This document shows, in pieces, positions 590 through 62,996 of a DNA stretch of 64,000 nucleotides. The number at the start of each line of letters is the position of its first letter. Within the stretch, counting starts at the first letter, position 1. Under the pieces are notes generated by a model that saw only the letters and a program-made list of their open reading frames with translations, did not search any database and was not told the DNA's origin. The DNA is taken from IMG/VR virus record IMGVR_UViG_3300045135_002615, positions 186,001-250,000 of that record; one strand, 5' to 3'. The position numbers and the translations under genes were made by a program.

Positions 590-602
590 ATAAAAGCTTT
601 AT
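590..602. promoter_or_regulatory. Bidirectional copy of the ATA-N5-TTTAT element (putative late promoter)
   Basis: ATAAAAGCTTTAT matches the motif on both strands, between divergent starts at 545 and 640. Confidence 0.6.
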
Positions 603-639
603 TATCTTTTTTTTAGCGAACCACTACCGAGGAGCGTCT

Positions 640-1494
640 ATGTACAGACAATCAGAAATATGGGAGGACTTGAAGTCCACATTGAGAGATAAAAAAGAGT
701 CTTGGCTTCAGATGAGACTTGAACCCGCACTCAATAAGTTTATGGGTGAGAACTACACCCTCAAGGATAAAGGGTACTACCTCATATCCTGTAGGTTCGC
801 TCAGTTGTTCTTAAGTCATCCAAATGCTGTGAGGGCAGGGCTCTCCATAACAGGTAGTCACATCTTCTACTTTAAAGGTGATAAGTACGTCTTGGCTTCA
901 CCTGGATATGGGAGCTTCATCCCCCATAAAGAGATATGGAGCACTCAGACGGGGTTGGACATCTTGATCTTTATGAAGAAGTACGGCATCATCGTAGACC
1001 CACCTAATCAACGAGACCATATGGAGATCTCTAGGGTCTTCAATAGACGACTCGGTATCTACGGAGCTGAGCTCTTAAAGAAGGGTCTCTATAAAAATGC
1101 CTACTATGGTCAGGTATATGGCAATACCTATGTCGATGCTCTTAAGAAGATGAGCCGTGTGAAGGATGTAAGGTCTGGGCTCTATTTAGTCCCTTTATCC
1201 ACGTCCAAGTATAGTCTAAGAGAGGCGAAACTTGAATATGGGGATAGGAATATCTTCTACTACAAACTTCAAAAGTACGTCATATTGGTTGAGCACTCCC
1301 GTTACGAGCCTCACTTCCTTGCCGACCATCAAGATATTTATGACAGTGGTCGCCACAACCCTCTCCTTGACTTCATGTTAGATCATAAAATCAAGGTCAA
1401 GCCTAAAGGACGAGATTGGAGGGAGATCGAGCATATGATCATTCACACTAGACGTGGTCACCTCAGAGGGGTGGAGTTGATCCACTTCTTTTAA
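640..1494 (+). CDS. Hypothetical protein with internal domain duplication
   Basis: GAGGAG RBS; two halves share GxYL...IFY[FY]KxxKYV...FM..[YH]xI.V.P...D..EI. Confidence 0.75.
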   Translation: MYRQSEIWEDLKSTLRDKKESWLQMRLEPALNKFMGENYTLKDKGYYLISCRFAQLFLSHPNAVRAGLSITGSHIFYFKGDKYVLASPGYGSFIPHKEIWSTQTGLDILIFMKKYGIIVDPPNQRDHMEISRVFNRRLGIYGAELLKKGLYKNAYYGQVYGNTYVDALKKMSRVKDVRSGLYLVPLSTSKYSLREAKLEYGDRNIFYYKLQKYVILVEHSRYEPHFLADHQDIYDSGRHNPLLDFMLDHKIKVKPKGRDWREIEHMIIHTRRGHLRGVELIHFF

Positions 1495-2273
1495 GTCCCA
1501 AACTGACTGAACAGGTCATCAAGGTCAAGATCATCTACGTCTGTGTTGACCTCTTGAAGAGGGGTCTTCTCAAACTGAGTGATCACGTTGTTGACGCCCT
1601 CAATGGTATCCGTAAGGACATCCGTCTTAACAGGGGGTCTGTTAAGTGCCGCCTCAAGCTCTTTAGAAGCGGCATCATTCAACTGAGTCTCTACTGACTC
1701 ACGCTCTCGTGTAAAGTCCTCTACTAAGGACTCTGTAGTCACGCTAGGGTTAGATACCGTTGTACCCTCAAAGGTGTTCGCAGTATATGTCCTTGAACCC
1801 CAACGCTGACCTAAAGCAATCTGCTCCTGGCAAAGCTTGAGTTGATCCCTCAATCGACCTTGCAGGTCTTTGAGGTCAGTACGCTTCGCCTTGATCACAC
1901 TCATAAGGTCTTCAAGATCATGGACACTCAAGGTGAACTCATTGATCTTCCTTTGAATGTGAATCAAGCGGGTAGCCGCTAAAGCCTCTCTCTCCTTTTG
2001 AGAGCGACCTGAACGTACATGTGGGTCATTAGCGATTAAGCTGTCCTGCTCAATCTTGTACTCAGTCTGAGAGACCAATAAGTCCCTCTTGATCTTCTGA
2101 AGGTTATGGGACACCTCCATAAAGATCTTCTCTGTGCGACTAAGAAACCCTCGTACCTCAGAGGTCTTTTGATTTAACCGGCTAGGACCGAAAGCGATGG
2201 GGTCTGAGTCCAACTCAACATCCATCTCACCTAGTGTCTTATAGATACGATCAATGTAGTTCTGTTCAATCAT
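1491..2273 (-). CDS. Coiled-coil protein with acidic tail, possibly UvsY-like recombination mediator
   Basis: Long helical pattern; acidic DDLDLDDLF tail; function is inference. Confidence 0.5.
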   Translation of the reverse strand: MIEQNYIDRIYKTLGEMDVELDSDPIAFGPSRLNQKTSEVRGFLSRTEKIFMEVSHNLQKIKRDLLVSQTEYKIEQDSLIANDPHVRSGRSQKEREALAATRLIHIQRKINEFTLSVHDLEDLMSVIKAKRTDLKDLQGRLRDQLKLCQEQIALGQRWGSRTYTANTFEGTTVSNPSVTTESLVEDFTRERESVETQLNDAASKELEAALNRPPVKTDVLTDTIEGVNNVITQFEKTPLQEVNTDVDDLDLDDLFSQFGT

Positions 2274-2580: not shown

Positions 2581-2599
2581 TACGAGTCCTTTCAAGTGT

Positions 2600-3320: not shown

Positions 3321-3324
3321 AGAT

Positions 3325-3909: not shown

Positions 3910-4826
3910 GCGTTATGATAGTGTACGGAAACTGCCCTGAGTTGCTTTTGATAAGAGAGCAAGAAGTGGTTCAAGAGTATCGTGCTAACGGATATGAGGT
4001 TAGATACCTATCAGATAAAGAAGGGGTCTTAGAGGAGGTGTTCTCTAGTGGGCTCTTTGATGTAGACCCTGTACTCGTAGTTATCCATAACCCAACAAAG
4101 GTGAAAGGTCTTAAAGGCTACTTGTCAGACACGAGGGGTTGTGAGGTCTTAGTTGTACATGGCAATGAGCGTTTACCTAAGCTGTTAGAGGGACATCCTT
4201 ATCAGGAGCTCAACGAGCCTAAGTATGATGACCAAAAGGTGACATGGGCGGCGGAGTTTTTACACAACTACATCAAGCGTATGGGTAAGAAGATAGACCC
4301 TAAACTCTGTATTGCTGTCGTACAGAAGTCGGGTACTGATGTCGGTGTACTAAGATGGGAAGCTCACAAGTATGTGATGGCTGTCGGAGACTCAGAAGAG
4401 ATTCCTGCTAAGATCATAGCGGGTCTTTATTCTGAACTGAGTGATCGTTACGCTTCAGACTTGATCAACGCCGTAGCTTCTTGTGATCAGAAGTTCTTCC
4501 TTAAGGTCTGTGCTCGTATGGAGAAGTCCTCTTCAAAGGACTTGACCATGTCTGTCTGTAACGGGCTTTTGTTTTACAAGCTGAAGGAATGGGTAGACGT
4601 GGCAGTCCGCCTAGATGCCAAAGAGAGTTTAGATGACATTGCACACGATCTAGGTATCAACCCATGGAAGCTCACTAACATCTTAGTTCCTCAGATCAAG
4701 TCAATGGGTCTTAACAGAGTAAGGAAGCTCTTGAGGGCTCTCTACGAAGCTGAGGACTCCGTTTTAAAGGGTTCAAGGGGTCCATGGGAGAAGCTCAAGT
4801 CAGGGGTTTTGCTTGCTCTCCAATAG
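3906..4826 (+). CDS. Clamp-loader delta (HolA-like)
   Basis: IVYG start, SGLF, GTDVGVLRWEAHK, LGINPWK and C-terminal D..LKG pattern; translationally coupled to the HolB-like gene. Confidence 0.7.
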   Translation: MSVMIVYGNCPELLLIREQEVVQEYRANGYEVRYLSDKEGVLEEVFSSGLFDVDPVLVVIHNPTKVKGLKGYLSDTRGCEVLVVHGNERLPKLLEGHPYQELNEPKYDDQKVTWAAEFLHNYIKRMGKKIDPKLCIAVVQKSGTDVGVLRWEAHKYVMAVGDSEEIPAKIIAGLYSELSDRYASDLINAVASCDQKFFLKVCARMEKSSSKDLTMSVCNGLLFYKLKEWVDVAVRLDAKESLDDIAHDLGINPWKLTNILVPQIKSMGLNRVRKLLRALYEAEDSVLKGSRGPWEKLKSGVLLALQ

Positions 4827-4835
4827 TCTTTTTAT
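4823..4835 (+). promoter_or_regulatory. ATA-N5-TTTAT element
   Basis: ATAGTCTTTTTAT about 38 nt before the ATG at 4873. Confidence 0.65.
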
Positions 4836-4872
4836 CTGAGGTGCATGGGAGATATTCACATAGGTGGTCACC

Positions 4873-6492: not shown

Positions 6493-6507
6493 GTCGGTAA
6501 AACTAAC

Positions 6508-6534
6508 GGGTGGGGTTGATAGTCAACCCCACCC
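6508..6534 (+). terminator. GC-rich hairpin after the pentapeptide gene
   Basis: GGGTGGGGTTGA-TAG-TCAACCCCACCC. Confidence 0.5.
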
Positions 6535-6580
6535 TTCTCAACCTAAGATTGCTCGTAAGAGCATACATGTCGAGAGTAAG

Positions 6581-9031
6581 ATGAACCAAGACGATTTTAA
6601 GTTTTCGGATCACGCCCTTTCCCTATTGTCTTCCTACTACATGGGTCAAGACGAACAAGACCCAACTGAGGCATTCCGTAGGGCGGCGTATTCTTTCACC
6701 CCTAATAAAGAGCTGGCAGAGAGGCTCTATGAGTATGTATGTAAGGGATGGTTTATGTTCTCCTCTCCTGTCCTCTCTAATGCAGGTCGTTCGGGACTAC
6801 CCATCTCTTGCTTTCTTAGCTATGTGGAGGACTCTATCACAGGTCTCATCTCACATACTGAGGAGCTGAGGTGGATGAGTGTTATGGGTGGCGGTGTAGG
6901 TGGTCACTGGGACGGTGTTCGCTCTGTATCAAACAAGTCACCTGGTCCAATCCCCTTCATCAAGACCGTTGATGCTGATATGGTTGCCTATCGTCAGGGT
7001 TTAACTCGTAAAGGATCTTATGCCGCGTACCTTGATGTTTCACACCCTGATCTTGTTGAGTTCTTAAATCTCCGCCTCCCCACAGGTGGTGACACCAACC
7101 GAAAAGCATTCAACATCAACAATGCACTCAACATCACAGATGCCTTCATGGAAGCTGTCCTTAAAGGAAAGCCATGGGACCTCATTGACCCTAATGATGG
7201 TGAAGTGAGAGACACCCTTGATGCCCGTGAACTATGGCAACGTATCCTTGAGGTTCGCTTCCGTACAGGTGAGCCCTACCTCAACTTCATTGATGAGGCG
7301 AATAGACACCTACCTCAACCCCTTAAGGACAAGGGGCTCAAGATCCATGGGTCTAATCTTTGTGTGAGAGGAGACACTCAAATCTTGACCGATAAGGGCT
7401 ACTACCCTATCCAATCACTCGCAGGTAAGCGTGTTAAAGTTTGGAACGGAAAGACATGGTCAACTTCCTTGGTGGCTAAGACAGGTGAAAATGAGAACCT
7501 ATTGAAGATCCGTCTTTCAAATGGGTCAGAACTCTACACCACCCCTTACCATAAGTTCTACACTGTAGAGGGTGTGGAGGTTCAAGCACAAAATCTTGAG
7601 AAGGGCTTAGCCCTCAAGCAGTTCAGCCTCCCTGTAGTGGCAGGTGAAGGCTCATGGGAGAACCCCTATAGCTTGGGGTTCTACCTCTATGATGCCACAG
7701 CCCCCGTTAATCTTGATCTTAAGACCCGTGTCTCATGGTTGAGTGGTTTCATTGACGCTAGAGGCTCAGTTGAGAAGCCCTTTACTCCCTTTATTCAGAT
7801 CAACCACTCTAACTATGACTTCATGCGTCAAGTGGCTCTTATGCTCAATACAATGGGCGTGGCCCCGATCTTAGAACAGAAGCCCACCCATACTGAAATC
7901 AAGATCAACCCCGTAGATGTACAACGACTAAAGGCTCTTGGGTTAGAGACACAGCGTCTTGTTGTCCGTTCAACTCACGTTGAAGGTTCTCACAAAGCTC
8001 AAGTTGAAGTCATGTCTGTTGAGCCATGTGGTGTGGCTGACACTTACTGCTTCAATGAACCCCAAAGACATATGGGCATCTTGAATGGTATCCTAACAGG
8101 CAACTGCAACGAGATCCATCTCCCTACCAGCCCTGAGAGATCCGCTGTCTGTTGTTTGAGCTCACTCAATCTAGAGCACTTTGACGAGTGGTGTGACACC
8201 ACCATCGTTGAGGACTTGATTGAGTTCCTCGATGATGTCCTCCAATACTTCATTGACAATGCACCCCATCAGCTCAGCAAGGCTATCTTCTCAGCCAAGT
8301 CAGAGCGGTCACTAGGTTTAGGGACTATGGGCTTCCACGCATATCTACAGCGAAAAGGTCTCCCCTTTGAGTCCGCCCTTGCTGTTGGTGTTAATCGCCG
8401 TATCTTCTCCACGATCAAGGAGAAGGCAGTACAAGCTACAGAGAGGCTCGCTAAGGAGAAGGGTGAATACCTTGATGGTATTGGCTCAGGTCGTAGGAAC
8501 TCACACTTGTTAGCTATAGCACCGAACGCCAACTCCGCTATCATCCTCGACACCTCCCCTAGTATCGAGCCTTGGAAGTCAAACGCCTTCACTCACCGCA
8601 CTCGTGCGGGCTCCTTCTTGCAGTTCAACAAGTACCTTGAAGAACTCCTTAAGACCAAAGAGGGTATCGACTTTGAGGAGGTCAAGCAGAGCATCATCTT
8701 GAGCCAAGGTTCTGTGCAACACCTTGAGTGCTTGACCGATTGGGAGAAGCAAATCTTTAAGACTGCATTTGAGCTTGATCAGATGTGGGTCGTTGAGCAC
8801 GCTTCTGTGAGACAAGAGTGGATCTGTCAAGGTCAGTCGGTCAACCTCTTCTTCCCTTCAGGCTCGGACATCAATTATGTCAGTAATGTTCACCTCTCAG
8901 CATGGAAGAAGAAGCTCAAGGGGCTTTACTATCTCCGCACCAATACTGGTGTAGTGGCGGATAAGGTCAGCGAGAAGGTGGAAAGACAAGCACTTAAAGA
9001 CTTTGATGAGTGCTTGAGCTGTCAAGGTTAA
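6581..9031 (+). CDS. nrdA: Ribonucleotide reductase class I alpha subunit, intein-containing
   Basis: SSPVLSN, PISCF, RKGSYAAYL, SNL/CNEI, AIAPNA, YY, C-terminal CLSC; start at MNQDDF preferred over the overlapping start at 6434. Confidence 0.95.
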   Translation: MNQDDFKFSDHALSLLSSYYMGQDEQDPTEAFRRAAYSFTPNKELAERLYEYVCKGWFMFSSPVLSNAGRSGLPISCFLSYVEDSITGLISHTEELRWMSVMGGGVGGHWDGVRSVSNKSPGPIPFIKTVDADMVAYRQGLTRKGSYAAYLDVSHPDLVEFLNLRLPTGGDTNRKAFNINNALNITDAFMEAVLKGKPWDLIDPNDGEVRDTLDARELWQRILEVRFRTGEPYLNFIDEANRHLPQPLKDKGLKIHGSNLCVRGDTQILTDKGYYPIQSLAGKRVKVWNGKTWSTSLVAKTGENENLLKIRLSNGSELYTTPYHKFYTVEGVEVQAQNLEKGLALKQFSLPVVAGEGSWENPYSLGFYLYDATAPVNLDLKTRVSWLSGFIDARGSVEKPFTPFIQINHSNYDFMRQVALMLNTMGVAPILEQKPTHTEIKINPVDVQRLKALGLETQRLVVRSTHVEGSHKAQVEVMSVEPCGVADTYCFNEPQRHMGILNGILTGNCNEIHLPTSPERSAVCCLSSLNLEHFDEWCDTTIVEDLIEFLDDVLQYFIDNAPHQLSKAIFSAKSERSLGLGTMGFHAYLQRKGLPFESALAVGVNRRIFSTIKEKAVQATERLAKEKGEYLDGIGSGRRNSHLLAIAPNANSAIILDTSPSIEPWKSNAFTHRTRAGSFLQFNKYLEELLKTKEGIDFEEVKQSIILSQGSVQHLECLTDWEKQIFKTAFELDQMWVVEHASVRQEWICQGQSVNLFFPSGSDINYVSNVHLSAWKKKLKGLYYLRTNTGVVADKVSEKVERQALKDFDECLSCQG
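7361..8104 (+). mobile_element. Intein in NrdA (248 aa) with partly deleted LAGLIDADG endonuclease
   Basis: NL|CVRGDT...ILTGN|CNEI; block B TTPYHKF; one intact motif LSGFIDARG. Confidence 0.92.
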
Positions 9032-9043
9032 TACTCTCTTTAT
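9031..9043 (+). promoter_or_regulatory. ATA-N5-TTTAT element
   Basis: ATACTCTCTTTAT upstream of the 9077-10670 gene trio. Confidence 0.65.
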
Positions 9044-11536: not shown

Positions 11537-11592
11537 AAAAGCCCCCCTCTCCCAAGACTTCGGTCACTCAGGGAGAGGGGGGCTTTCTTTTT
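11537..11592. terminator. Bidirectional intrinsic terminator
   Basis: C-rich and G-rich inverted arms flanked by A and T runs, between convergent genes. Confidence 0.7.
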
Positions 11593-11771: not shown

Positions 11772-11816
11772 AACTCACCTCCTGTCTCAGAGGTGGTCGT
11801 GACTATAAAAGCAGTA

Positions 11817-12155
11817 TCAGACCTTGACCCATGTGGTCAGGACTAACCAACCCCAATCTCTCAAGTCATCCTCAGTTGGGAGGATACCCCGCCTCGATTT
11901 GAGAGCAAGGTCAGAGGAGAGGTTCATCACCTTTTGGTCATTGTTCTTTACACCCCATCGGTACATCTCTTTTAGAGTCTCTAGGGGTAAGGGGGTCGAG
12001 CCACTATCTAAGGGCTTGATATGTCGCTCGTATTTGTCTTTAACAATCTGAGCCTCACCTGACCACACCTCTTCACCTGCTACGATTTTATTCCGAATAC
12101 GGGCGATGGTGTTGTCATTGTAAGGGAGGCTGTCGATCATCTCAAGTAGGGTCAT
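11817..12155 (-). CDS. Hypothetical protein
   Basis: Starts 1 nt after the stop of the 12157-12684 gene. Confidence 0.65.
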   Translation of the reverse strand: MTLLEMIDSLPYNDNTIARIRNKIVAGEEVWSGEAQIVKDKYERHIKPLDSGSTPLPLETLKEMYRWGVKNNDQKVMNLSSDLALKSRRGILPTEDDLRDWGWLVLTTWVKV

Positions 12156-12684: not shown

Positions 12685-12739
12685 AACGCACTCCTTATTG
12701 TATGATTGACTAAGGAGTGCGTTATAAAAAGACTATTTT

Positions 12740-13402: not shown

Positions 13403-13466
13403 ATCTGTATCCTCCGTTGTTAGTATAAGTCTATTATAGATATAAAAAGACTTACAGGAGACACTA

Positions 13467-15690: not shown

Positions 15691-15754
15691 TGGTGGTTCG
15701 ATAACCCTTCTATCAACACGAGTTGTTCATAGACTAATCTATAGGAGATACTTT

Positions 15755-17460: not shown

Positions 17461-17503
17461 TGATCAAATCCTTTCATTACATGTGTAAGGATTTATAAAT
17501 AAG

Positions 17504-17866
17504 TTATCGTTTCCTGTTAGGGTTTCTTGCTTCGTAGTCGATGCGTGCTTTTTGCTTACGGCACTTATCCGAGCAGTATCTTTTTCTGTCTTGAGCCACA
17601 ACTTCTGTGCAATCGTAGTTGTCACAGACCTTGATCGTGACTTCAACGATTTTTGAGATCTTTTCGTTTTGCTGTTGTTGCATCTCTTCTTGTGTGTGTG
17701 GGTATCCCGTCATGCTTCTACCTGGGCATGGGTGATACCAACAGCTCTCATTACTCTCAGGGTAACTTGGGGAGGTAAGTCGAGAGAGGCACTTCCACTT
17801 CTTTTTTCCATCGGAGTCGATAAACCAATGGACTCTGCATTTTCTTGAACCATCTAAAATAGCCAT
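17504..17866 (-). CDS. Cys-rich putative Zn-binding protein
   Basis: C..C...YCSDKCR plus N-terminal Cys/His residues. Confidence 0.65.
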   Translation of the reverse strand: MAILDGSRKCRVHWFIDSDGKKKWKCLSRLTSPSYPESNESCWYHPCPGRSMTGYPHTQEEMQQQQNEKISKIVEVTIKVCDNYDCTEVVAQDRKRYCSDKCRKQKARIDYEARNPNRKR

Positions 17867-18721: not shown

Positions 18722-18907
18722 ATGAAAAGACATTTGACCCCACTCATCCTCAGCCACACCTCATCTCGCAGGTATGACCGACAGCGTCTCTTGAAGGCGA
18801 TTGATAAGCTGACCCCTGAAGAGCAAGCAGACCTATTTGCTATCCTCCAAGACAAGACCGAGGAAGCACAGAAGTACAAGACCTTATCCCGCAGACGCAT
18901 GTTCTAA
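18722..18907 (+). CDS. Small hypothetical protein
   Basis: AAAGGAG RBS; MKRHLT start resembles the MRHLT leaders. Confidence 0.6.
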   Translation: MKRHLTPLILSHTSSRRYDRQRLLKAIDKLTPEEQADLFAILQDKTEEAQKYKTLSRRRMF

Positions 18908-18959
18908 TAGGTCTTTTATCTCATAGACCTCTCTAACAGATGACAGAGAGGTCTATGAG

Positions 18960-19511
18960 ATGAGAAGAATAGCAAAAGCAAACGTAACACCGATCAGACA
19001 GAGGACACAGTTCTCTTGCGTGTCTACTTCAACGTGTATGGCACTCAATGCGGTCGGTGTTAAGTGTACCGAGGACGAGGTTAATGAGGTTATCGGTGCT
19101 CGTCCCATGCAAGGTGCAAGGTGGGAAGAGGTGCTCGCATGTGCTCAGTATTTCGGGTGTAGGGCAACGCTTACGACACCTGCAACTCTCACCCAAGTTA
19201 AGGCTTGGACTGACGCAGGTAAACCTGTTCTCATCGCATGGAACCCAGAGGGGCGGGATTGGAGCCATGCAAGTCTTATCTTTGATGTGACGGGTGAAAA
19301 GGGAAGCTATGTCGTCCATGTAGCTGATCCTAACATCCCTAACCCTGACAAGACAACCCGTGAGGTTAGTGAGGATGAGTTCTACTCAAAGTGGTACGAG
19401 AAGTGGCCTAACTATTTAGTACGTCGCCCCGCTCTCATGATTGAGCGAGAGGTCTGTGAGAATGGTAGGCAACTTATGGCGAGTAAGATCGCGTCTAAGT
19501 ACCTACGCTAA
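18960..19511 (+). CDS. C39-like cysteine peptidase
   Basis: Q...SC, H, ADP catalytic pattern; motif at 18907-18919; C-terminal KIASKYLR. Confidence 0.8.
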   Translation: MRRIAKANVTPIRQRTQFSCVSTSTCMALNAVGVKCTEDEVNEVIGARPMQGARWEEVLACAQYFGCRATLTTPATLTQVKAWTDAGKPVLIAWNPEGRDWSHASLIFDVTGEKGSYVVHVADPNIPNPDKTTREVSEDEFYSKWYEKWPNYLVRRPALMIEREVCENGRQLMASKIASKYLR

Positions 19512-19558
19512 TAGTTCATTTATCCATAGGCATATGCAACTAGATGCCACCGTGAGGT

Positions 19559-22894: not shown

Positions 22895-22897
22895 CAC

Positions 22898-23362
22898 ATG
22901 GATAACGTAACCAAGATAGACAGACTTGTGGCTTGTGTTGAAGACCCTTCAAAGGTTTTCTATGAGTGGGACACAATCCTTGAGGCACGACCTATTCCAA
23001 CTTATTGGAAGCGTAAAGGGACAACGGTCACGCTCAGGTCTTTTGGACCTCAAGGTAATGTGATTAGCCTTCAGCCTTACACTCATCTATTAGGTATGGA
23101 CTACAAGATCAAGATCAAGGGGTGGATACAGACCCCTAATGCCTTTGTCTTTGTGGTTGACCCCTGTGGTTTGCCTTCTGATGTCACCGACCCATATCTA
23201 GTGGTAGCGATGTCGAGTGACATCCTTGACTATGATAGAGCACTTCGTATGATCCGATCAAGTGAAGTACACCCTTGTAACTTTGAGGTCACAGCCACGA
23301 TTGGTTATCGTGATCGGCTCAGGAGACAGGTCAGGTTTGATATACCCTCTGATATGGTGTAG
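22898..23362 (+). CDS. Hypothetical protein
   Basis: Operon-packed ORF; only weak resemblance to 2H-phosphoesterases, without HxT motifs. Confidence 0.6.
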   Translation: MDNVTKIDRLVACVEDPSKVFYEWDTILEARPIPTYWKRKGTTVTLRSFGPQGNVISLQPYTHLLGMDYKIKIKGWIQTPNAFVFVVDPCGLPSDVTDPYLVVAMSSDILDYDRALRMIRSSEVHPCNFEVTATIGYRDRLRRQVRFDIPSDMV

Positions 23363-23403
23363 TTCTTTTATATTCTTCATGGTGTGTTCTAAGGAGAAGC
23401 ATT

Positions 23404-24775: not shown

Positions 24776-24868
24776 GTATTCACTCCTTGAGTGGGTTATA
24801 CAAGGCTTATGGTGTTAGTTTGTTTATGAGGGTCTTGCTCATAAAGGTTTGTTTTTTTGGAGATGACC

Positions 24869-27346: not shown

Positions 27347-27397
27347 TTCCTTTTCAATAGTCCTTTTATGAGTGGGTGTAATAAAGTGGAGGTGTCT

Positions 27398-31053: not shown

Positions 31054-31066
31054 ATAGTCCTTTTAT
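31054..31066 (+). promoter_or_regulatory. ATA-N5-TTTAT element for the decoration/capsid operon
   Basis: TCAATAGTCCTTTTAT, identical to the copy at 27354. Confidence 0.7.
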
Positions 31067-34815: not shown

Positions 34816-34868
34816 GGGGGTTATACTCCATTTATCACCACCACATCAGGCACCAACTAAAGGAGGAG

Positions 34869-40523: not shown

Positions 40524-41277
40524 GAACTCAAGGACGAGGCTACATCTTGGTGACTGCACTCAAGATAACTTTTTCACAGAGCCTTTCATCGACCTGACAG
40601 TCACATCACCTCCGTACAATCTCAGCATAGAGTATGAAGACCATGATGATGGTGGTTCTTATGGGGACTACTTGGACTTCTGCACTCAGTGGATGACCAA
40701 CTTGTACAGATGGTCTAAGCCTAACGCTAGGTTCTGTTTGAACATCCCTTTGGACATCCAGCTGGATGGTTCTCGCTTCATTAGTGGTGATTTAACACGA
40801 GTGGCACTTGAGTGTGGTTGGCATTACAGGACTTCTATCATATGGCATAAAAACCAAGTGACTTCGAGGACTGCATGGGGTAGTTGGATGTCTCCAAGTG
40901 CTCCAATGGTGATTGCTCCTGTTGAGATGATCCTTGTGTTCTACAGAGATGATTGGAAGAAGCCCGATTTAAACGGATTGGGTACTGATCTCAGCAAGGA
41001 AGAGTTCATTAAATGGACAAGTGGGATGTGGTCTATGGCTACGGAGTCTGCGAAGCGTATAGGACACCCTGTACCCTACCCCATAGAGCTACCCCATCGT
41101 TGTATCAAAATGTTCAGTTGGATCGGGGATACTGTATTTGACCCATTTGCGGGGTCTGGGACGACCCTCATCGCCGCCCACAATTCTAAGCGAGACGCAG
41201 TAGGCGTTGAGCTTTCCAAAACTTATTTTGATCTTGCTGTGGAGCGTTTCTCTAAAGAGTGCTTCACGTTGCTTTAA
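40513..41277 (+). CDS. DNA amino-methyltransferase, beta class
   Basis: TSPPY, TAWGSWMSPSAP, HPVPYP, DPFAGSGTT. Confidence 0.92.
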   Translation: MIFENSRTRLHLGDCTQDNFFTEPFIDLTVTSPPYNLSIEYEDHDDGGSYGDYLDFCTQWMTNLYRWSKPNARFCLNIPLDIQLDGSRFISGDLTRVALECGWHYRTSIIWHKNQVTSRTAWGSWMSPSAPMVIAPVEMILVFYRDDWKKPDLNGLGTDLSKEEFIKWTSGMWSMATESAKRIGHPVPYPIELPHRCIKMFSWIGDTVFDPFAGSGTTLIAAHNSKRDAVGVELSKTYFDLAVERFSKECFTLL

Positions 41278-41324
41278 TACCTTTTTTATGAGTCTCTCCT
41301 GTTAAAGTTGAGGAGGTTTCTGAC

Positions 41325-45642: not shown

Positions 45643-45754
45643 AGTTAACTCCTGTCTCCTATTCACTACAAGAGACCCTATAGATAATCTATCGTAAATT
45701 GGTCACCCCACCTCCGCATTGATATAAGTCCTTAAGATTACGAAAGGATATACA

Positions 45755-52305: not shown

Positions 52306-52650
52306 ATGGACAAAGACGCAATCGCAACACGTTTACTTACTCTCCGCTCACTCATCCTCCAACTCAAGGAGGAGGAGAACGTCCTTCGCTCTCAGCTTGA
52401 GGTAGGGGACAGCATTGAAGTTCCTATGGGTAAGGTCACTTTCTACACTCAGGTTCGTACCACTTACAATGAGACCGAGCTCTACAGCCATCTTATGGAG
52501 GAAGGTATTGACATCGACCTCGTTGGTGAAGCTCGTGTTCGGGTCAGTCGTGAGAAGGCGGAGTCCGTAAATGAGGACATCGCTACGATCTTGACACAGC
52601 ATCGCGAGGTTACTGAGGTTCCCTCTCTCAAGGTTACGCCTAAGAAGTGA
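52306..52650 (+). CDS. Hypothetical protein
   Basis: AAGGA RBS; TATAAT upstream. Confidence 0.7.
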   Translation: MDKDAIATRLLTLRSLILQLKEEENVLRSQLEVGDSIEVPMGKVTFYTQVRTTYNETELYSHLMEEGIDIDLVGEARVRVSREKAESVNEDIATILTQHREVTEVPSLKVTPKK

Positions 52651-52708
52651 TAGTCTGTTTATGGGGGGGCTGATTTATCACAAGCCAACCATGAAGGGTG
52701 TTCCCCAT

Positions 52709-53194
52709 ATGAGATACTTGACTTCAAATATGAGCAGGTCTGTACCGCACATGCCCAATCTTTCCGTAGCACAGAGGAAAGATCTCTTCCGATTAGAGTC
52801 GATGCTCTCTTCTACTCAAGAGTATACACAGCTGCCCTCCGCTTACTCCAAGATGACTCACATATTAAAAAGTAAGGTCTTCACAGACCGGAGTAGCGTA
52901 GATGATGCCAGTAACCATATCGAGTCTCTAGGCGTATTAAAAGATGTCTTTGACAGGGTCAGGAATCACCTCAAAAAAGAGATGGTGAGAGAGTATAAAG
53001 AGCTTCTTGCGGATCGTAGGTCTGCGGAGGTGCGTGGTGACATTGCACTAGTAGAAGACCTCGAAGATGAGATCTACTTTCATCAGCGGGATTTTAATAA
53101 GACTACGGATCGACTCAAACTTATTGATCGTCAATACCGCACAGAGATCAATGTACTCGTCAAGCACAAGGTCAGCCTGACCCGTATACGTTGA
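52709..53194 (+). CDS. Helical hypothetical protein, putative virion cargo
   Basis: MRYLTS start; motif at 52650-52662. Confidence 0.7.
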   Translation: MRYLTSNMSRSVPHMPNLSVAQRKDLFRLESMLSSTQEYTQLPSAYSKMTHILKSKVFTDRSSVDDASNHIESLGVLKDVFDRVRNHLKKEMVREYKELLADRRSAEVRGDIALVEDLEDEIYFHQRDFNKTTDRLKLIDRQYRTEINVLVKHKVSLTRIR

Positions 53195-53245
53195 TAGTCT
53201 TTTTATAGGTACTCTCTCCTATCAATCCACGATAGGAGAATACCT

Positions 53246-54856: not shown

Positions 54857-55427
54857 GCCCAAACTCCCTTCGAGATACAGGCAGGTAGTCAAAGCCAGGT
54901 GACACGCTCTCCCCATCGGAGATCTTCTTGCCCTCTTGATCTACCTTCATGTTAAAGGTCGCCTTTTCAGCACATGGGCTGAATGTGGCGACCTCTTCTA
55001 TATTGTCCGCCCACGCCATGAGGTAGGTACTCCCCTCAAATGGATTACCCTTAAAGTCTGTGCGTAATCCATAAGCAAACACGGGGACTCCGAGTTCATC
55101 CGCAACCCGTGTTAAGTCATACACCTGTAGCTTATTCAAGAACTGAGACTCATCTACGAATATGACCTTGAGCTCTCTTCGTGCATGCTCTTCAGACACT
55201 ATCTCAAACAAAGAGCTGTGCTCTTTAAGGGGGGTGGCCTCATGCTTAAAGCCCACCCTTGAAGCCACCTGAGCGACACCATCCCTTTTAGCTGCTATAG
55301 ATGGTATGAGCATCATGAAAGGGATTGATCTCTCATTACAAGAGTGAGCCCTCATAAGGAGGTTTGCGGTCTTACCCGCATTGACTGTTGAGTAGATAAA
55401 GTTTAACAAGGTGACATCTCTCTCCAT
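54846..55427 (-). CDS. tdk: Thymidine kinase
   Basis: NAGKT, ASRVG, VDESQF, YGLRTDF...FEGS. Confidence 0.93.
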   Translation of the reverse strand: MERDVTLLNFIYSTVNAGKTANLLMRAHSCNERSIPFMMLIPSIAAKRDGVAQVASRVGFKHEATPLKEHSSLFEIVSEEHARRELKVIFVDESQFLNKLQVYDLTRVADELGVPVFAYGLRTDFKGNPFEGSTYLMAWADNIEEVATFSPCAEKATFNMKVDQEGKKISDGESVSPGFDYLPVSRREFGLSP

Positions 55428-56029
55428 CCAAAATAGGATGATACTTTGTGGCGAACCTCTTGCACGAGGTTTTTTACTTTTTTACTATCCCACCCATATG
55501 TCCTAGCAATGTGTGAAGACTTCATCCCACCCATCATCGCGTCATACACTTTAAGGGCATCATCGGTGAAGCGACTTCTTACCTCTTCCATGATCATGTC
55601 ATCCGAGGGGTCTTGGTCATAAGACAAGTCCATAGAGTGTGAGTGAGAGCTTGAGATGTCCTCCTCAACACCCAACATGGCTTTAGAGCTGTCTTTACGG
55701 TGTTTATTGATGACGTTCATTACGATGCAGTTCATCACCATGACCACATAGGTTGAGAAAGCTGACTTCTCAGGGTCATAGGGACAAGAACCCTCATTAC
55801 GGATCATAATCCCTTTGTAGACTTCTTGTAGGACATCTTCCGGATCAAGTCCTTCCTTAGATACGGAGTGGGCTTGTCTCTTATAGAAGATAAGGCGAAC
55901 GTCTTGACTTCTTGTATCAAGGTCAATCCCTAGTTTGCGGGGTTTGACTTGATCAAAACTGAAGGATGCGATAGGAGTGATCCCGATTTGCCATTGACGT
56001 GTGGCTTCAATCCCTGAATAACTCGACAT
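55403..56029 (-). CDS. Sigma70-family sigma factor
   Basis: Region 2 EDVLQEV...YDPEKSAFSTY; C-terminal HTH. Confidence 0.75.
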   Translation of the reverse strand: MSSYSGIEATRQWQIGITPIASFSFDQVKPRKLGIDLDTRSQDVRLIFYKRQAHSVSKEGLDPEDVLQEVYKGIMIRNEGSCPYDPEKSAFSTYVVMVMNCIVMNVINKHRKDSSKAMLGVEEDISSSHSHSMDLSYDQDPSDDMIMEEVRSRFTDDALKVYDAMMGGMKSSHIARTYGWDSKKVKNLVQEVRHKVSSYFGWREMSPC

Positions 56030-56125: not shown

Positions 56126-56153
56126 ACTATAGTGAATGTATAAGTGCTGTCAA
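56126..56153 (-). promoter_or_regulatory. Sigma70-type promoter for the sigma-tdk operon
   Basis: TTGACA-N16-TATAGT on the minus strand. Confidence 0.7.
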
Positions 56154-56178
56154 GTCACAACAAAGATAAAGGATTCTA

Positions 56179-56931: not shown

Positions 56932-57596
56932 AGGACTTATGGCTCAGGAAAGGGCTAGGTCCACCCTTACCTGAATACCAAAAGTACCTTGATTCACGAG
57001 GAGTCACAGATCAGTGCTCCGTATCTTTCCACTCATGGATGCCACATGATGAAGTTCAATGCCCTAAGTTCAAAGCACACTATGGTGCTCAAGGTGAACG
57101 TATCTCACAACACCTTATCGTCCCCGTCACTTCACCAAGAGGTGAGATACTTGGACTAGAGTGTCGCAAGATCATAGACGGAGAAAAGAAGGTAACCCAA
57201 TACCGAACCGTCAGTTCACAATGGAACCCGTATATACTCGGTGCAGAGAAGGCATTTGAAGCACTATGGTCAGGGGGTGACGTATGGGTCGTTGAGGGTA
57301 TGTTTGATAAAGTAGCCCTTGACAGGATCTTACCCAAGACAGATGCAGTTATAGCTACTCTTAGAGCGGGTATGGATGCGATCACCTTAGAGATGCTCAC
57401 TCAGTTCTATACACCTGCTTCTACTATCTATGTCTGTTATGACAATGATGAGACAGGTAGGAAGAAGGCTAAGTGGTTGCATAAGTCGTTTATTGACAGA
57501 GGTGTGAGGGCTGTCGTGTGGTCATATAGAGGTAAAGACCCTAATGATGTATGGACACATGGTGGAGACAAACAACTAATGAGAATGTTCCTATAG
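56928..57596 (+). CDS. DnaG-like TOPRIM primase (no Zn finger)
   Basis: YL.SRG, VVEGMFD, YDND.TG, KDPND. Confidence 0.85.
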   Translation: MKDLWLRKGLGPPLPEYQKYLDSRGVTDQCSVSFHSWMPHDEVQCPKFKAHYGAQGERISQHLIVPVTSPRGEILGLECRKIIDGEKKVTQYRTVSSQWNPYILGAEKAFEALWSGGDVWVVEGMFDKVALDRILPKTDAVIATLRAGMDAITLEMLTQFYTPASTIYVCYDNDETGRKKAKWLHKSFIDRGVRAVVWSYRGKDPNDVWTHGGDKQLMRMFL

Positions 57597-60638: not shown

Positions 60639-61177
60639 AGAGGACACGCCTCATGTGAGGGGTCTTTCTCACCTGCGTAATAGACGGTGACCACATTAAC
60701 CATAGACCCTTCAACTTCAAATACCACAATCAAGTCACCGAGTGCTTCTGCTCTCCACTTGAGTCTTTGTCCCATAAAGATACGCTCTTTGATCTGCTCG
60801 ATGACCCTTGATCTCTTGTTGTAGTTCTGTCGAAGGTATCTACCAAACAGGTTGAAGTAAGTCTTTAGGTCACCTATAGTCACACCTCTCTGATCCATAC
60901 GGAACTGAGCGTGTGTGGTGATCTTCATCCTCTTGAATGTCTTATCCCCAACTCGTTCAAACTCTAGGTCATAGATATTATGAGTGTACGAGTCAGGGAT
61001 GGCTTGTCCTTCTTGAACGATTCTCACAAGTTGCCTCTTTAGTTTAGGGTTTCGGATATTATCCTCGATCCTCCTCTTAGTGTGGCATACTCCGCCTGGG
61101 TATCCGAGTGGAGGGTTCAAGTCCGAGATACGCTCAAGTCGAGCGACCCTCATGATTAGTCGGTCTATCTTGTTCAT
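60635..61177 (-). CDS. Tagged protein with DUF4258/RelE-like putative RNase domain
   Basis: MNKIDRLIMRVARLER; TTHAQFRMDQRG...VVF...VVTVY. Confidence 0.6.
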   Translation of the reverse strand: MNKIDRLIMRVARLERISDLNPPLGYPGGVCHTKRRIEDNIRNPKLKRQLVRIVQEGQAIPDSYTHNIYDLEFERVGDKTFKRMKITTHAQFRMDQRGVTIGDLKTYFNLFGRYLRQNYNKRSRVIEQIKERIFMGQRLKWRAEALGDLIVVFEVEGSMVNVVTVYYAGEKDPSHEACPL

Positions 61178-61229
61178 TTTTTAGCTCCTTTATGTACTTA
61201 ATGTGATGAATTCATAAAGGAGCTATGAC

Positions 61230-62930
61230 ATGGACCCTATCGACCGACTAATCTCAAGCCTCAACAAGAAGGTTATCCGTAAACTCGCCGCTGAAGACCT
61301 CCCTACCTTTGAGGAAGCGATCAAGGGAAAGACCTTCAAGAACCCTAATACGGGTAATGACGTTCAGTTTGGATCACTCCCTGCCGAAGAGCAGAAGAAG
61401 ATCCGTGCTGAATATGACAAGAAGGTGGAGGAGCTTGAAGGAGAGGGTAAGGGTAAGGGAGAGAAGAAGCCTCTCAAAAAGATGACCAAGGTTCAATTGC
61501 TTGATCAGCTTGAAGGGGATAAGGACTTCTCAGGGGTTGATCTCACTAAGTTTAAAGACTTTGATTGGTCAAGTGTGGATTTGAGGGGTGCTAACTTCTC
61601 AGGTTCAGACCTGACAGGTGCGTACTTTGGTGTTGGTTCTAGACTCGAAGGAGCGAACTTTGAGGGTGCTAATCTTTCAGGTGTCGAGTTCAGAGGGAAA
61701 AAGGGTTATGGCGTGAGCCCGTACAGCGATACTCCAGATACTGTCCATAAAAACGTCAACTTCAAGGGTGCTAATCTTGAAGGTGCGGAGATGTCTTTTC
61801 TTCGTTTTGAAAATTCAGATTTAAGCGGTGCTAATCTAAAGGGTGCTGAGCTTGACGCGGTGATGATAGATAGAAAATGCACCGTAAGAGGTGCTGACTT
61901 TGAGGGTGCAACCTTTCATGCCTCCCAATTCAATGGCGTCAATCTGAAGGGTGTGAACTTTGCGGGAGCAACCATAAAGTCTGGGGGTGGATATAATAAC
62001 AGTAGAAGAACCTTCGACAGAGCGAACATCTCAGGTGCAGACTTCTCAGGTGCAAACTTCGCCTTCGGTGACGCTTTTAGGTTTGGTGGTAACTTTGGGA
62101 AACCCGCCAAAATAAATGGAGCTAAGTTTAGATTTGATGTTCTAGAAAGTGTGGGAACTAAAGAATTTAAAGCATTTGGCTTTGATAAAGACAATCCTCC
62201 TGAAGGCTTGTCCGATAAGGTTCTACATAAAATGGTTGGTGGTAGGGAGTACCTAGAGTATAGGGAGGCTGAAGAAGATAAAGCTGAAGAAGCTAAAGCT
62301 AAGGCTGATGCGGAAGCCAAAGCTAAAGCTGATGAGGAAGCCAAAGCCAAAGCTAAAGCTGATGAGGAAGCCAAAGCCAAAGCTAAGGCTGATGAGGAAG
62401 CTAAAGCTAAGGCTGATGCTGAAGCCAAAGCTAAGGCTGATGCTGAAGCCAAAGCTAAGGCTAAAGCTGAAGCCAAAGCTAAGGCTGATGCTGAAGCCAA
62501 GGCTAAGGCTGATGAGGAAGCCAAAGCTAAAGCTAAGGCTGATGAGGAAGCCAAAGCCAAGGCTAAGGCTGATGAGGAAGCCAAAGCTAAAGCTGAGGAA
62601 GAAGAGAAGATCAAAGAGAACTCAAAACGTCTTAAAGACCTTGAGTCTAAGATTAAAGCCGTTAAGAAGAAAGATGATCTCATTGACCTTGTGTCTGAGC
62701 TAGGTAGGATGAAGGGTCAACTCTCAAACGCTAAGTTTAAGGACAAACTAGAGTCTGAGATGAAGGCTGTCGATAAAGCTGTACAAAACGCGAAAGAGAA
62801 CACGTCTTTCACGGGTAGGATTAAGAGCTTCTTCGGTCTAGGTAAAAAGGCAAGGCTCAAGGAAGCCCGACTCTTGCTCAATGGACTTCAGGATGAGATC
62901 GAGCATCTCAAGAGGGACATCAACCGCTGA
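61230..62930 (+). CDS. Pentapeptide-repeat protein with TolA-like Ala/Lys/Glu helix
   Basis: GANF/GANL/GADF repeats; KAKADEEA repeats; RKLAA and KKAR sites. Confidence 0.85.
   Translation: MDPIDRLISSLNKKVIRKLAAEDLPTFEEAIKGKTFKNPNTGNDVQFGSLPAEEQKKIRAEYDKKVEELEGEGKGKGEKKPLKKMTKVQLLDQLEGDKDFSGVDLTKFKDFDWSSVDLRGANFSGSDLTGAYFGVGSRLEGANFEGANLSGVEFRGKKGYGVSPYSDTPDTVHKNVNFKGANLEGAEMSFLRFENSDLSGANLKGAELDAVMIDRKCTVRGADFEGATFHASQFNGVNLKGVNFAGATIKSGGGYNNSRRTFDRANISGADFSGANFAFGDAFRFGGNFGKPAKINGAKFRFDVLESVGTKEFKAFGFDKDNPPEGLSDKVLHKMVGGREYLEYREAEEDKAEEAKAKADAEAKAKADEEAKAKAKADEEAKAKAKADEEAKAKADAEAKAKADAEAKAKAKAEAKAKADAEAKAKADEEAKAKAKADEEAKAKAKADEEAKAKAEEEEKIKENSKRLKDLESKIKAVKKKDDLIDLVSELGRMKGQLSNAKFKDKLESEMKAVDKAVQNAKENTSFTGRIKSFFGLGKKARLKEARLLLNGLQDEIEHLKRDINR
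62280..62600 (+). repeat. AKAKAD(E/A)E low-complexity tandem repeats
   Basis: Repeated GCTAAGGCTGATGAGGAAGCCAAA units. Confidence 0.95.
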
Positions 62931-62996
62931 CAATCCTCCCTCGTTAGTCTTTTAATAGAAGCACCACTCTGAGAGACTAATGAAAGAGGGTGCTCT

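What the first reader, a model, noticed from the sequence alone, without database searches (positions are those of the whole stretch)
590..62956. Compact late-promoter motif ATA-N5-TTTAT defines a scattered regulon
Exact copies lie at 590 (both strands), 4823, 9031, 11805(-), 12724(-), 17495(-), 18907, 19511, 27357, 31054, 34823, 41277, 52650, 53194 and 61214(-). Variants lie at 13442(-), 15701, 23359, 24815, 45680(-), 61181 and 62944. Most are about 30-50 nt before a start and often overlap the previous stop codon. They precede head genes and tagged genes, not replication enzymes. I saw no -35 box. The sigma factor at 55403-56029, itself behind a sigma70 promoter, is one candidate reader.
Basis: partly seen in the sequence, partly recalled or inferred. 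Interest (0 to 1): 0.7.

Follow-up and report, generated by a model that had tools for sequence, protein, structure and literature searches.

The report
Compact phage promoter motif without -35
A 13-15 base signal (TA-N5-TTTAT) sits about 40 bases before roughly a quarter of the genes of an uncultured 297-kb marine phage and its relatives; it is most likely a phage-specific promoter for virion genes.

Summary
ATA-N5-TTTAT occurs 17 times in the window against 1.7 expected. It occurs 53 times in the whole 296,642-bp phage genome, and 45 of those lie 27-50 nt before a start codon on the same strand. The 8 other copies are about what chance gives.

An unseeded-flank search gives the consensus yTnaTAgtYYnTTTATa, with no -35 element, at roughly 95 sites. 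Relatives with 38% and 31% G+C carry the same motif. It is kept at orthologous head-gene positions, while internal operon genes lack it.

Twenty-three sites lie in short divergent gaps with no room for another promoter, so the motif is a core promoter rather than an RNA processing site. It heads head, baseplate, tail-fibre and terminase units. Helicase, methylase and sigma genes use TATAA-type promoters instead. The large ribonucleotide reductase subunit also sits in a motif-led unit, so "late only" is approximate.

The genome has no detectable RNA polymerase gene. It has one true sigma-70-family protein (55403-56029, minus strand) behind TTGACA-16-TATAGT. The link between that sigma and the motif is plausible but untested.

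This is a new member of a known kind, comparable to T4 gp55 and phiEco32 gp36 promoters.

The parts
590..602 (.). Near-palindromic copy read on both strands. It lies in the 94-nt gap between the divergent genes ...-545(-) and 640-1494(+).
4823..4835 (+). Exact copy before the pentapeptide-repeat gene (4864-6492). The large ribonucleotide reductase subunit (6434-9031) follows in the same unit.
9031..9043 (+). Exact copy overlapping the reductase stop codon. It precedes 9077-9553 and the two tagged genes 9566-10093 and 10104-10670.
11805..11817 (-). Exact copy before 11568-11771(-).
12724..12736 (-). Exact copy before 12157-12684(-). The leader forms a 13-bp hairpin that holds the ribosome-binding site.
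13442..13454 (-). Variant (TA-N6-TTTAT) about 41 nt before an ATG of the 12740-13591(-) ORF.
15701..15713 (+). Variant (TTCTAT) before 15755-16510.
17495..17507 (-). Exact copy before 17044-17460(-).
18907..18919 (+). Exact copy before 18960-19511. The gap is divergent, with only 4 nt between the motif and the neighbour's start.
19511..19523 (+). Exact copy before the unit 19565-23362.
23359..23371 (+). Variant (GTA) before 23404-23811. The motif is kept in 13 of 15 distinct orthologous upstream regions.
24815..24827 (+). Variant (TTA) before the 825-aa gene 24869-27346, the first gene of the head module.
27357..27369 (+). Exact copy before 27398-27910, the prohead protease 27912-29354 and 29390-31036. 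The motif is kept in 20 of 22 orthologous upstream regions.
31054..31066 (+). Exact copy 121 nt before 31188-31775 and the major head protein 31796-32674. It is a conserved island in an alignment of 16 relatives.
34823..34835 (+). Exact copy before the tagged gene 34875-35243.
41277..41289 (+). Exact copy before 41325-43325 (666 aa, unknown function).
45680..45692 (-). Variant (TCTAT) before 44998-45642(-).
52650..52662 (+). Exact copy before 52709-53194.
53194..53206 (+). Exact copy before 53246-54856 (536 aa, unknown function).
57481..57493 (+). Exact copy inside gene 56928-57596, 112 nt before the next start. It is probably a chance copy.
61181..61193 (+). Variant (TTA) before 61230-62930. 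It crosses the 61214(-) copy within a 52-nt divergent gap.
61214..61226 (-). Exact copy before 60635-61177(-).
62944..62956 (+). Two-mismatch variant before the 3139-aa tail-fibre gene that starts at 62997.
55403..56029 (-). Sigma-70-family protein (208 aa) with region 2 and region 4 domains joined by a disordered linker. It is the candidate reader of the motif.
56126..56153 (-). TTGACA-16-TATAGT, an 11/12 match to a host-type promoter, about 95 nt before the sigma start codon.

Best explanation
The motif is the core promoter of a phage-specific transcription class. The phage has no RNA polymerase of its own, so the host core enzyme must read the motif after being redirected by a phage protein. 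The most likely such protein is the sigma-70-family protein at 55403-56029(-), which is itself made from a host-type TTGACA/TATAGT promoter.

The promoter is a single compact element, TA-N5-TTTAT (fuller form yTnaTAgtYYnTTTATa), with no -35 partner. It resembles the T4 late promoters and the phiEco32 gp36 promoters in this respect. It heads the units for head, baseplate, tail-fibre, packaging and tagged internal proteins, plus a few others such as the ribonucleotide reductase unit. Helicase, methylase and regulator genes use TATAA-type promoters.

Transcripts probably start at or within a few bases after TTTAT. That would place the invariant TA at about -12/-11. The leaders are 30-45 nt long, and about two thirds fold into a hairpin that starts right after the motif and carries the ribosome-binding site in its 3' arm.

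Shown here: the motif, its placement, its conservation and the gene classes it precedes. Inferred: that it is a promoter, who reads it, its timing and its start site.
For: - Enrichment and placement.
- Strand asymmetry within the same upstream windows: 45 sense against 13 antisense, with 0.9 expected from shuffles.
- Expectation-maximisation seeded only with TTTAT recovers the same motif in this genome and in a 38% G+C relative. With a seven-position seed (TA and TTTAT) it also holds in a 31% G+C relative. That gives roughly 80-97 sites per genome.
- Orthologous upstream regions keep the motif at a fixed distance: 20/22, 36/39 and 13/15. Internal operon genes do not: 0-1/29, 0/9 and 0/44. The motif is a conserved island in an otherwise variable spacer.
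- Twenty-three of 64 sites lie in divergent gaps, and most of those (18) leave about 40 nt or less between the motif and the opposite gene's start. No other promoter fits there.
- Gene content of motif-led units: major head protein, protease, virion structural protein, baseplate wedge. The terminase and a 14-kb tail-like cluster lie downstream of motif copies with no other promoter in between.
- Helicases, primase and methylases are in the non-motif set and sit behind TATAA-type promoters.
- No beta or beta-prime polymerase domains were found, with controls positive.
- There is one sigma-family gene. Its fold matches only sigma factors. It is conserved in all five relatives tested. Its invariant residues are concentrated in region 2, with one in region 4, which fits a conserved -10-type element and no conserved -35.
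- A host-type promoter precedes the sigma gene.
- Precedent for single-element sigma promoters: PMC8948821.
Against: - No transcription start is mapped. The metatranscriptome contigs were short, came from 95-97% relatives, and one runs across the 31054 copy.
- The sigma has a region-4-like helix-turn-helix, which normally reads a -35 element. In phiEco32 the missing -35 was attributed to a missing region 4 (PMC8948821).
- A second protein with a sigma region 4 match above Pfam's cut-off, and a NusG-like protein, are also conserved. The region-4 protein is more conserved than the sigma.
- The large ribonucleotide reductase subunit is in a motif-led unit, and a motif copy lies 90 nt before the small-subunit gene.
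- Most motif-led genes have no recognisable function, so "late" rests on a minority of annotated genes.
- Gene calls and starts came from my own simple caller.
Confidence: 0.55

Rival explanations
1. The motif is a phage promoter, but the sigma at 55403-56029 does not read it. Another phage factor does, for example the sigma-region-4 protein with the NusG-like protein at genome 127325-128413, or an unrecognised protein. The two-domain sigma would then serve a bipartite class, such as the C-run-N13-TATAAg promoters.
For: - The sigma has both region 2 and region 4, while the motif has no -35.
- A bipartite class, C-run then 12-15 nt then TATAA, exists before 13 genes.
- The region-4 protein and the NusG-like protein are conserved in relatives at 72%/49% and 58%/38% identity.
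Against: - The C-run class is not conserved in the two relatives that keep the sigma: 2 genes in one and 0 in the other.
- The TA-N5-TTTAT motif is conserved in both.
- A protein made only of region-4-like domains has no known way to melt a -10 region.
Confidence: 0.25
2. The motif acts in RNA, not DNA. It would be a cleavage or processing site followed by a protective 5' hairpin, or a translation signal, on long read-through transcripts.
For: - The motif often overlaps the upstream stop codon with no terminator in between.
- It is U/A-rich and single-stranded, and a stable hairpin follows directly: in 23 of 39 structured leaders the first paired base is 0-1 nt after TTTAT.
- One RNA contig runs across a copy.
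Against: - Twenty-three sites are in divergent gaps, and most leave about 40 nt or less upstream. No upstream transcript could exist there unless it starts inside the opposite gene.
- Two near-palindromic or overlapping copies serve both directions (590, and genome 1027/1031).
- Thirteen positions of fixed sequence is far more specific than known RNase E-type sites.
Confidence: 0.08
3. The motif is the binding site of a phage transcription activator or repressor that sits over a weak host-type promoter, rather than the core promoter itself.
For: - It has a fixed position before genes.
- A/T-rich sequence around it (TTTATa) could be a poor -10 element.
- The phage encodes helix-turn-helix proteins.
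Against: - The motif is asymmetric and strand-specific, and nothing else is conserved within 25 nt on either side.
- TtTATa lacks the A at -11 of a host -10 hexamer.
- Operators are usually palindromic and variable in position.
Confidence: 0.07
4. The pattern is a by-product of A/T-rich spacers and tandem stop codons (TAATAG), with no function of its own.
For: The 5' half contains TAA/TGA and TAG, and these are the real stop codons in 23 of 41 co-directional sites.
Against: - Shuffling the upstream windows themselves gives 0.9 copies against 45 observed.
- Divergent sites, which have no stop codon, keep the same bases.
- The motif is conserved at orthologous sites but absent before internal genes.
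Confidence: 0.01

Closest known systems
Phage T4 late promoters (TATAAATA), read by host core polymerase with gp55, gp33 and the gp45 clamp
   Same: Both are a single short A/T-rich element near -10 with no -35. Both sit before virion genes and are read by host polymerase redirected by a phage sigma-like protein. In both, short leaders carry hairpins that involve the ribosome-binding site.
   Different: The sequence differs: TA-N5-TTTAT over 13-15 bp against 8 bp. The candidate sigma here has a region-4-like domain, which gp55 lacks. tblastn against the phage collection at E <= 1e-3 matched only one uncultured relative, so no similarity to any cultured phage's sigma, gp55 included, was detected. 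The clamp dependence of T4 late transcription cannot be assessed here.
phiEco32 gp36 middle/late promoters (tAATGTAtA, start 6-8 bp downstream; PMC8948821)
   Same: Both are single conserved elements without a -35, read by a phage-encoded sigma-70-family protein with host core polymerase. The sigma gene itself is expressed earlier.
   Different: The consensus differs and the element here is longer. gp36 lacks region 4, and that was the published explanation for the missing -35. The sigma here keeps a region-4-like domain. The host and phage type are unrelated.
Salmonella phage 7-11 gp47 late promoters (GTAAtg-16-aCTA; PMC8948821)
   Same: A phage sigma with regions 2 and 4 drives late genes.
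   Different: Those promoters are bipartite with a 16-bp spacer. Here no second element exists within 25 bp upstream.
Late promoters of phages with their own multisubunit polymerases (phiKZ, AR9; PMC7598289, PMC5449584)
   Same: Both are jumbo phages with short late-promoter motifs next to the start site and no -35.
   Different: Those motifs are read by phage-encoded polymerases. No beta or beta-prime domains were found in this genome, with controls positive.

Membership tests
Canonical bacterial sigma-70 promoter (-35/-10) | A -35 hexamer 16-18 bp upstream of the -10 hexamer | tested here: not met
   Information content is at most 0.13 bit at every position from -25 to -3 relative to the motif, across 45 sites. 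Expectation-maximisation gave the same result.
Canonical bacterial sigma-70 promoter (-35/-10) | A -10 hexamer of TAnnnT type, 6-8 bp before the start site | tested here: inconclusive
   The invariant TA followed by gtYY could be -12 to -7 if the start is the first base after TTTAT. The last position is C or T, not always T. No start site is mapped.
T4-type late promoter system | TATAAATA consensus | tested here: not met
   The consensus here is yTnaTAgtYYnTTTATa.
T4-type late promoter system | A gp55-like sigma that has region 2 only | tested here: not met
   The sigma here has region 2 and a C-terminal helix-turn-helix domain. tblastn against 50,697 phage records at E <= 1e-3 matched only the uncultured relative LR745208.1, so no cultured phage's sigma, gp55 included, was matched.
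T4-type late promoter system | Activation through the sliding clamp and gp33 | not testable with these tools
   A clamp-loader-like gene exists at 3325-3909. This says nothing about coupling to transcription.
phiEco32 gp36-type single-element promoter | One conserved element, no -35, upstream of middle/late genes | tested here: met
phiEco32 gp36-type single-element promoter | Consensus tAATGTAtA and a sigma without region 4 | tested here: not met
   The consensus differs, and a region-4-like domain is present (PMC8948821).
Sigma-70 protein family (for ORF 55403-56029) | Region 2 domain | tested here: met
   Pfam Sigma70_r2 scores 19 bits, below the 24-bit cut-off. phrog_1740 (sigma factor) matches at E 1.8e-6. 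The AlphaFold2 model has pLDDT 82, and the Foldseek hits listed (ranks 1-50) are all sigma factors or sigma-containing polymerase complexes (SigH, ECF sigmas, sigma-E, sigma-32), with probability 0.72-1.0.
Sigma-70 protein family (for ORF 55403-56029) | Region 4 helix-turn-helix | tested here: inconclusive
   No Pfam region 4 hit was found for this ORF. The model has four C-terminal helices (140-199) after a disordered linker, and the Foldseek alignments span both domains of ECF sigmas.
Promoters of phage-encoded RNA polymerases (T7, N4, phiKZ/AR9 types) | A phage polymerase gene in the genome | tested here: not met
   No match to RNA_pol_Rpb2_6 or RNA_pol_Rpb1_2, with controls positive. The T7-type search had no valid control and is uninformative. 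A DxDGD-like motif in a 1364-aa protein is not conserved in this genome, where it reads DFDGN. The genome is about 95% complete, and a novel polymerase cannot be excluded.
RNase processing site with protective hairpin | Monophosphate 5' ends generated from longer transcripts | not testable with these tools
   Only assembled RNA contigs of relatives were available.

The most novel reading that the evidence does not exclude
An abundant, uncultured clade of aquatic jumbo phages (over 500 relatives of the head protein in IMG/VR, G+C 31-47%) uses one previously undescribed single-element promoter, TA-N5-TTTAT. It is read by a phage sigma that keeps a region-4 domain but needs no -35 element. The promoter is coupled directly to leader hairpins that begin at the transcript's first base and sequester the ribosome-binding site. 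Together these would form a combined transcription and translation or stability module for virion genes.
Probability: 0.35. Interest if true: 0.55.

Novelty: new member of a known kind. Interest (0 to 1): 0.45.

Why it matters
- The motif gives a usable transcription map of about 95 units for a widespread phage lineage that has no cultured member and few recognisable genes. Motif-led ORFs of unknown function can be provisionally classed as virion or late genes.
- It pairs a testable promoter with a testable sigma. That would add a third, independent example of -35-independent phage sigma promoters, this one from a sigma that retains region 4.
- The tight coupling of the promoter to hairpins that hold the ribosome-binding site could show how late mRNAs are stabilised or gated.
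- A promoter of about 15 bp and a sigma of about 200 aa could serve as an orthogonal expression pair.

Tried and rejected
- **RNA evidence.** Five metatranscriptome runs hold relatives, but only as short assembled contigs at 85-97% identity. No 5'-end information could be drawn from them, and one contig spans the 31054 copy. The second read-laying run was not used for that reason.
- **Complex prediction.** The sigma with single-stranded motif DNA was not folded by the tool. This is no evidence either way.
- **Atlas searches.** Three large motif-led ORFs (24869, 41325, 53246) gave no usable lead.
- **PHROGs.** Scans of 20 motif-led or motif-unit window ORFs gave almost nothing.
- **Solved structures.** phmmer against solved structures gave nothing for the sigma, for two tagged genes or for three giant ORFs.
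- **Nearest phage records.** megablast, and tblastn of an 825-aa protein, found no phage record.
- **Distant sigma homologues.** Those in 61-65% G+C phages had no motif in about 20 kb around the sigma gene. That is uninformative, because those are early regions of different composition.
- **Other relatives.** Tunturi_5 and LR745208.1, relatives by head protein, lack the exact motif around their head genes. The motif is therefore limited to the lower-G+C clade. LR745208.1 keeps TAGTY-like 5' halves at two orthologous spots, which is too few to interpret.
- **Hidden polymerase.** This was rejected after the DxDGD check.
- **Bacteroidota-type promoters.** The TAnnTTTG type was rejected. The spacing differs, and these genes carry strong Shine-Dalgarno sites, which by general knowledge (not tested here) are uncommon in that phylum.

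Full report
**Context**

The window is bases 186001-250000 of a single 296,642-bp contig. It is an IMG/VR virus record judged about 95% complete, has 47% G+C, and was found in a seawater metagenome. It is a jumbo phage.

Its major head protein (31796-32674) has 573 relatives in IMG/VR, the 80 kept being 90-97% identical. Among named phages, the head protein is 88% identical to that of the uncultured 485-kb record LR745208.1, 47% to Tunturiibacter phage Tunturi_5 and 38% to Bacillus phage G. No cultured close relative exists.

**The observation**

*Counts and placement.* ATA-N5-TTTAT occurs 17 times in the window against 1.69 expected, and 0 of 100 shuffles reached that number.

The seven variants are real one- or two-mismatch copies, each 35-55 nt before a start. 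In the whole genome there are 53 copies against about 5 expected from a first-order Markov model. Forty-five of the 53 lie 27-50 nt before a start codon on the same strand, a zone that covers 3% of positions. The remaining 8 are about what chance gives.

*Strand asymmetry.* Within the same upstream windows the sense strand holds 45 copies and the antisense strand 13. Shuffling those windows gives 0.9.

*Extent of the motif.* Aligning the sites adds a pyrimidine at -2 and a weak A/G at -1. Nothing else is conserved from -25 to -3, so there is no -35 box.

An expectation-maximisation search seeded only with TTTAT converges on yTnaTAgtYYnTTTATa. T1, A2, T8, T10, A11 and T12 are nearly invariant, and the search estimates about 95 sites, or roughly 30% of genes.

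**Conservation**

I fetched two complete relatives: G002 (312 kb, 38% G+C) and G004 (316 kb, 31% G+C). Their sigma homologues are 49% and 35% identical to this one.

- Both show the sense-strand excess: 36 against 2.7 expected, and 46 against 7.6.
- Both give the same consensus, with about 81 and 97 sites. G004 needed a stronger seed.

In an alignment of 16 relatives (71-78% DNA identity) of the spacer before gene 31188, the motif is an island of invariant columns in otherwise variable sequence.

Across the IMG/VR loci, distinct orthologous upstream regions keep the motif at a fixed distance:

| Gene | Upstream regions with motif | Role |
|---|---|---|
| 27398 | 20/22 | motif-led |
| 31188 | 36/39 | motif-led |
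| 23404 | 13/15 | motif-led |
| protease (27912) | 0-1/29 | internal gene of unit |
| 29390 | 0/9 | internal gene of unit |
| major head protein (31796) | 0/44 | internal gene of unit |

(All.)

The motif is limited to this lower-G+C clade. Forty-one-kb stretches around the head genes of LR745208.1 (55% G+C) and Tunturi_5 (59% G+C) have no exact copy.

**Promoter or RNA signal?**

Twenty-three of 64 well-scoring sites lie between divergently transcribed genes. In most of them (18) only about 40 nt or less separate the motif from the opposite gene's start. Three cases are especially tight:

- The near-palindromic copy at 590 serves both directions within a 94-nt gap.
- At 61181/61214 two copies cross each other in a 52-nt gap.
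- At 18907 only 4 nt remain between the motif and the neighbour's start.

No other promoter fits in these gaps, and no upstream transcript exists to be processed. This is the main argument that the motif is the core promoter. It remains an inference, because no start site could be mapped. The available RNA data are short assembled contigs of relatives.

**Which genes**

In the window the motif heads:

- the head module (24815 variant; 27357 for the protease unit; 31054 for the major head protein unit);
- the 3139-aa tail-fibre gene (62944 variant);
- 61230-62930;
- many ORFs of unknown function.

Genome-wide, motif-led units include a baseplate wedge protein and a virion structural protein. 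The terminase, and a 14-kb cluster of very large proteins (no family match; one shares a YEFYQDxDG segment with its homologues in both relatives), lie downstream of strong copies with no other promoter between.

The non-motif set holds DNA helicases, primase and methylases. The three large helicase genes identified sit behind TATAA-type promoters, one of them with a C-run. In the window, five methylases, the clamp-loader-like gene, thymidine kinase, the sigma gene, and the transglycosylase and amidase genes lack the motif.

Two exceptions stand out. The large ribonucleotide reductase subunit follows the pentapeptide-repeat gene in the unit headed by 4823. The small subunit lies 90 nt after a copy just outside the window.

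Three of the seven have an exact copy and one has a variant. Related tags occur in other motif-led units.

The picture is therefore "mainly virion genes". Timing is inferred from gene content only.

**Who reads it**

No beta or beta-prime polymerase domain is detectable, with controls positive. The T7-type search had no valid control. A DxDGD-like motif in a 1364-aa protein is not conserved. Host polymerase is therefore implied.

The only region-2 match in the genome is the ORF at 55403-56029 on the minus strand. The evidence that it is a sigma factor:

- It scores below Pfam's cut-off but matches the PHROG sigma family.
- It has 81 metagenomic homologues, some labelled sigma-24 by JGI.
- Its model has pLDDT 82 and shows two helical domains joined by a disordered linker.
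- Its listed Foldseek matches (ranks 1-50) are all sigma factors or sigma-containing polymerase complexes.

Thirteen of its 15 invariant residues lie between residues 33 and 108, and one lies in the C-terminal domain. This fits a conserved -10-type element and no conserved -35.

The gene is preceded by TTGACA-16-TATAGT, an 11/12 match, so it can be made by unmodified host polymerase.

Against a simple assignment:

- The region-4-like domain has no DNA partner in the motif.
- An operon outside the window (genome 127325-128413) encodes a NusG-like protein and a protein with a region 4 match above Pfam's cut-off. The region-4 protein is more conserved than the sigma.
- A bipartite C-run/TATAAg class exists before 13 genes here. 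It is nearly absent from the two relatives, which argues that it is host-specific rather than the conserved sigma's target.

**Leaders and start site**

Leaders after the motif are more structured than other upstream regions:

| Genome | Mean z, motif leaders | Mean z, other upstream regions | p |
|---|---|---|---|
| this genome | -2.3 | -0.7 | 3e-4 |
| G002 | -1.6 | -0.1 | 2e-8 |
| G004 | -1.3 | -0.6 | 0.01 |

In 33 of 55 leaders the ribosome-binding site lies in the 3' arm of the hairpin. In 23 of 39 structured leaders the first paired base is 0-1 nt after TTTAT.

This favours a start at the first base after the motif. That would put the invariant TA at -12/-11 and TTTAT at -5 to -1, and the hairpin would be a 5'-terminal stabiliser.

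The alternative is a start 6-9 nt further on, as in T4 and phiEco32 (PMC8948821). That would remove part of the 5' arm, and the mean folding energy would fall from -12.9 to about -6 kcal/mol. Transcripts from the motif would then be more translatable than read-through transcripts, which is the T4 lysozyme-type arrangement (from my own knowledge of that literature).

The long leader of gene 31188 has two hairpins with some compensatory changes.

**Comparison with known systems and novelty**

The system works like the T4 gp55 late promoters and the phiEco32 gp36 promoters. All three are a single element with no -35, read by a phage sigma-like protein on host core polymerase, ahead of virion genes. 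It is not a member of either set, because both the consensus and the sigma architecture differ.

I found no description of this motif in the papers searched. The phage G multi-omics paper reports only generic promoter predictions (PMC12484599). I rate the finding a new member of a known kind.

**Caveats**

Gene calls and start sites came from my own simple caller. The number of sites depends on the score threshold (64 at the stricter cut, about 95 by expectation-maximisation). Functional classes rest on the minority of genes that have any annotation.

Noticed in passing
window 45723-45754 (before 45755-46372); genome 4029, 9805, 12263, 109215/109252, 169659, 183678, 232553, 282965: A second promoter-like class: a run of 4-11 C, then 12-15 nt, then TATAAg, often after an A/T tract. 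It precedes 13 genes, including a helicase and a transglycosylase. It is almost absent from two relatives, so it may be host-specific.
   Followed up: partly
window 34300-34815, 34875-35243, 9566-10093, 10104-10670; genome 5004, 75691, 81282, 83007, 103698, 147725-150665: A shared N-terminal peptide of about 22 aa (MRHLTASQKIAxLExRIAxLEK, plus two related forms) occurs on at least 12 otherwise different proteins. It may be a capsid-targeting or protease-removed propeptide.
   Followed up: partly
window 6434-9031 and 38336-40252: The large ribonucleotide reductase subunit and a DNA methylase each carry an intein with a LAGLIDADG endonuclease domain.
   Followed up: no
window 14129-15690, 36297-37094, 38336-41277: At least five N6/N4 DNA methylase genes lie in 64 kb, none of them behind the motif.
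   Followed up: no
window 31067-31187: The 121-nt leader before gene 31188 (upstream of the major head protein) has two hairpins and a highly conserved block (ACACACTACTCTCTTGAAAACAGAGAGTATGAG). A few compensatory changes occur across 16 relatives.
   Followed up: partly
window 61178-61229: Two motif copies on opposite strands cross within a 52-nt divergent gap. The spacer of each copy is complementary to the ribosome-binding site of the other gene, so the two transcripts would overlap antisense at their 5' ends.
   Followed up: partly
genome 127325-128413 (outside the window; L120:326-1414): An operon encodes a NusG-like protein (170 aa, weak NusG N-terminal match and a KOW-like motif) and a 190-aa protein with two sigma region-4-like helix-turn-helix domains. 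Both are conserved in relatives. They may act in antitermination or as a co-activator.
   Followed up: partly
genome 185077-185180 (just left of the window): A motif copy is followed by a terminator-like hairpin and a T run, 90 nt before the small ribonucleotide reductase subunit gene. This may be an attenuator.
   Followed up: no
window 62997-64000 and beyond (genome 248997-258416): A 3139-aa protein carries many repeated tail-fibre domains.
   Followed up: partly
window 56164-56177 (-): A TA-N6-TTTAT variant lies upstream of the host-type promoter of the sigma gene. This could allow autoregulation or could be chance.
   Followed up: no
genome 23-988(-) and 296453-296632(-): ORFs at the two contig ends share an identical 30-aa C-terminus. 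This suggests terminal redundancy or a circularly permuted assembly.
   Followed up: no
L136 (Tunturi_5, PP885688.1 261069-301968): The virion-gene spacers of this distant relative share a different recurring pattern, GACTAC then about 8-10 nt then TTAGAG/TATAG. This may be its own late promoter.
   Followed up: no
window 47276-47347, 47716-47788: Two tRNA genes (Glu-TTC and Lys-TTT) lie in a stretch with few ORFs.
   Followed up: no
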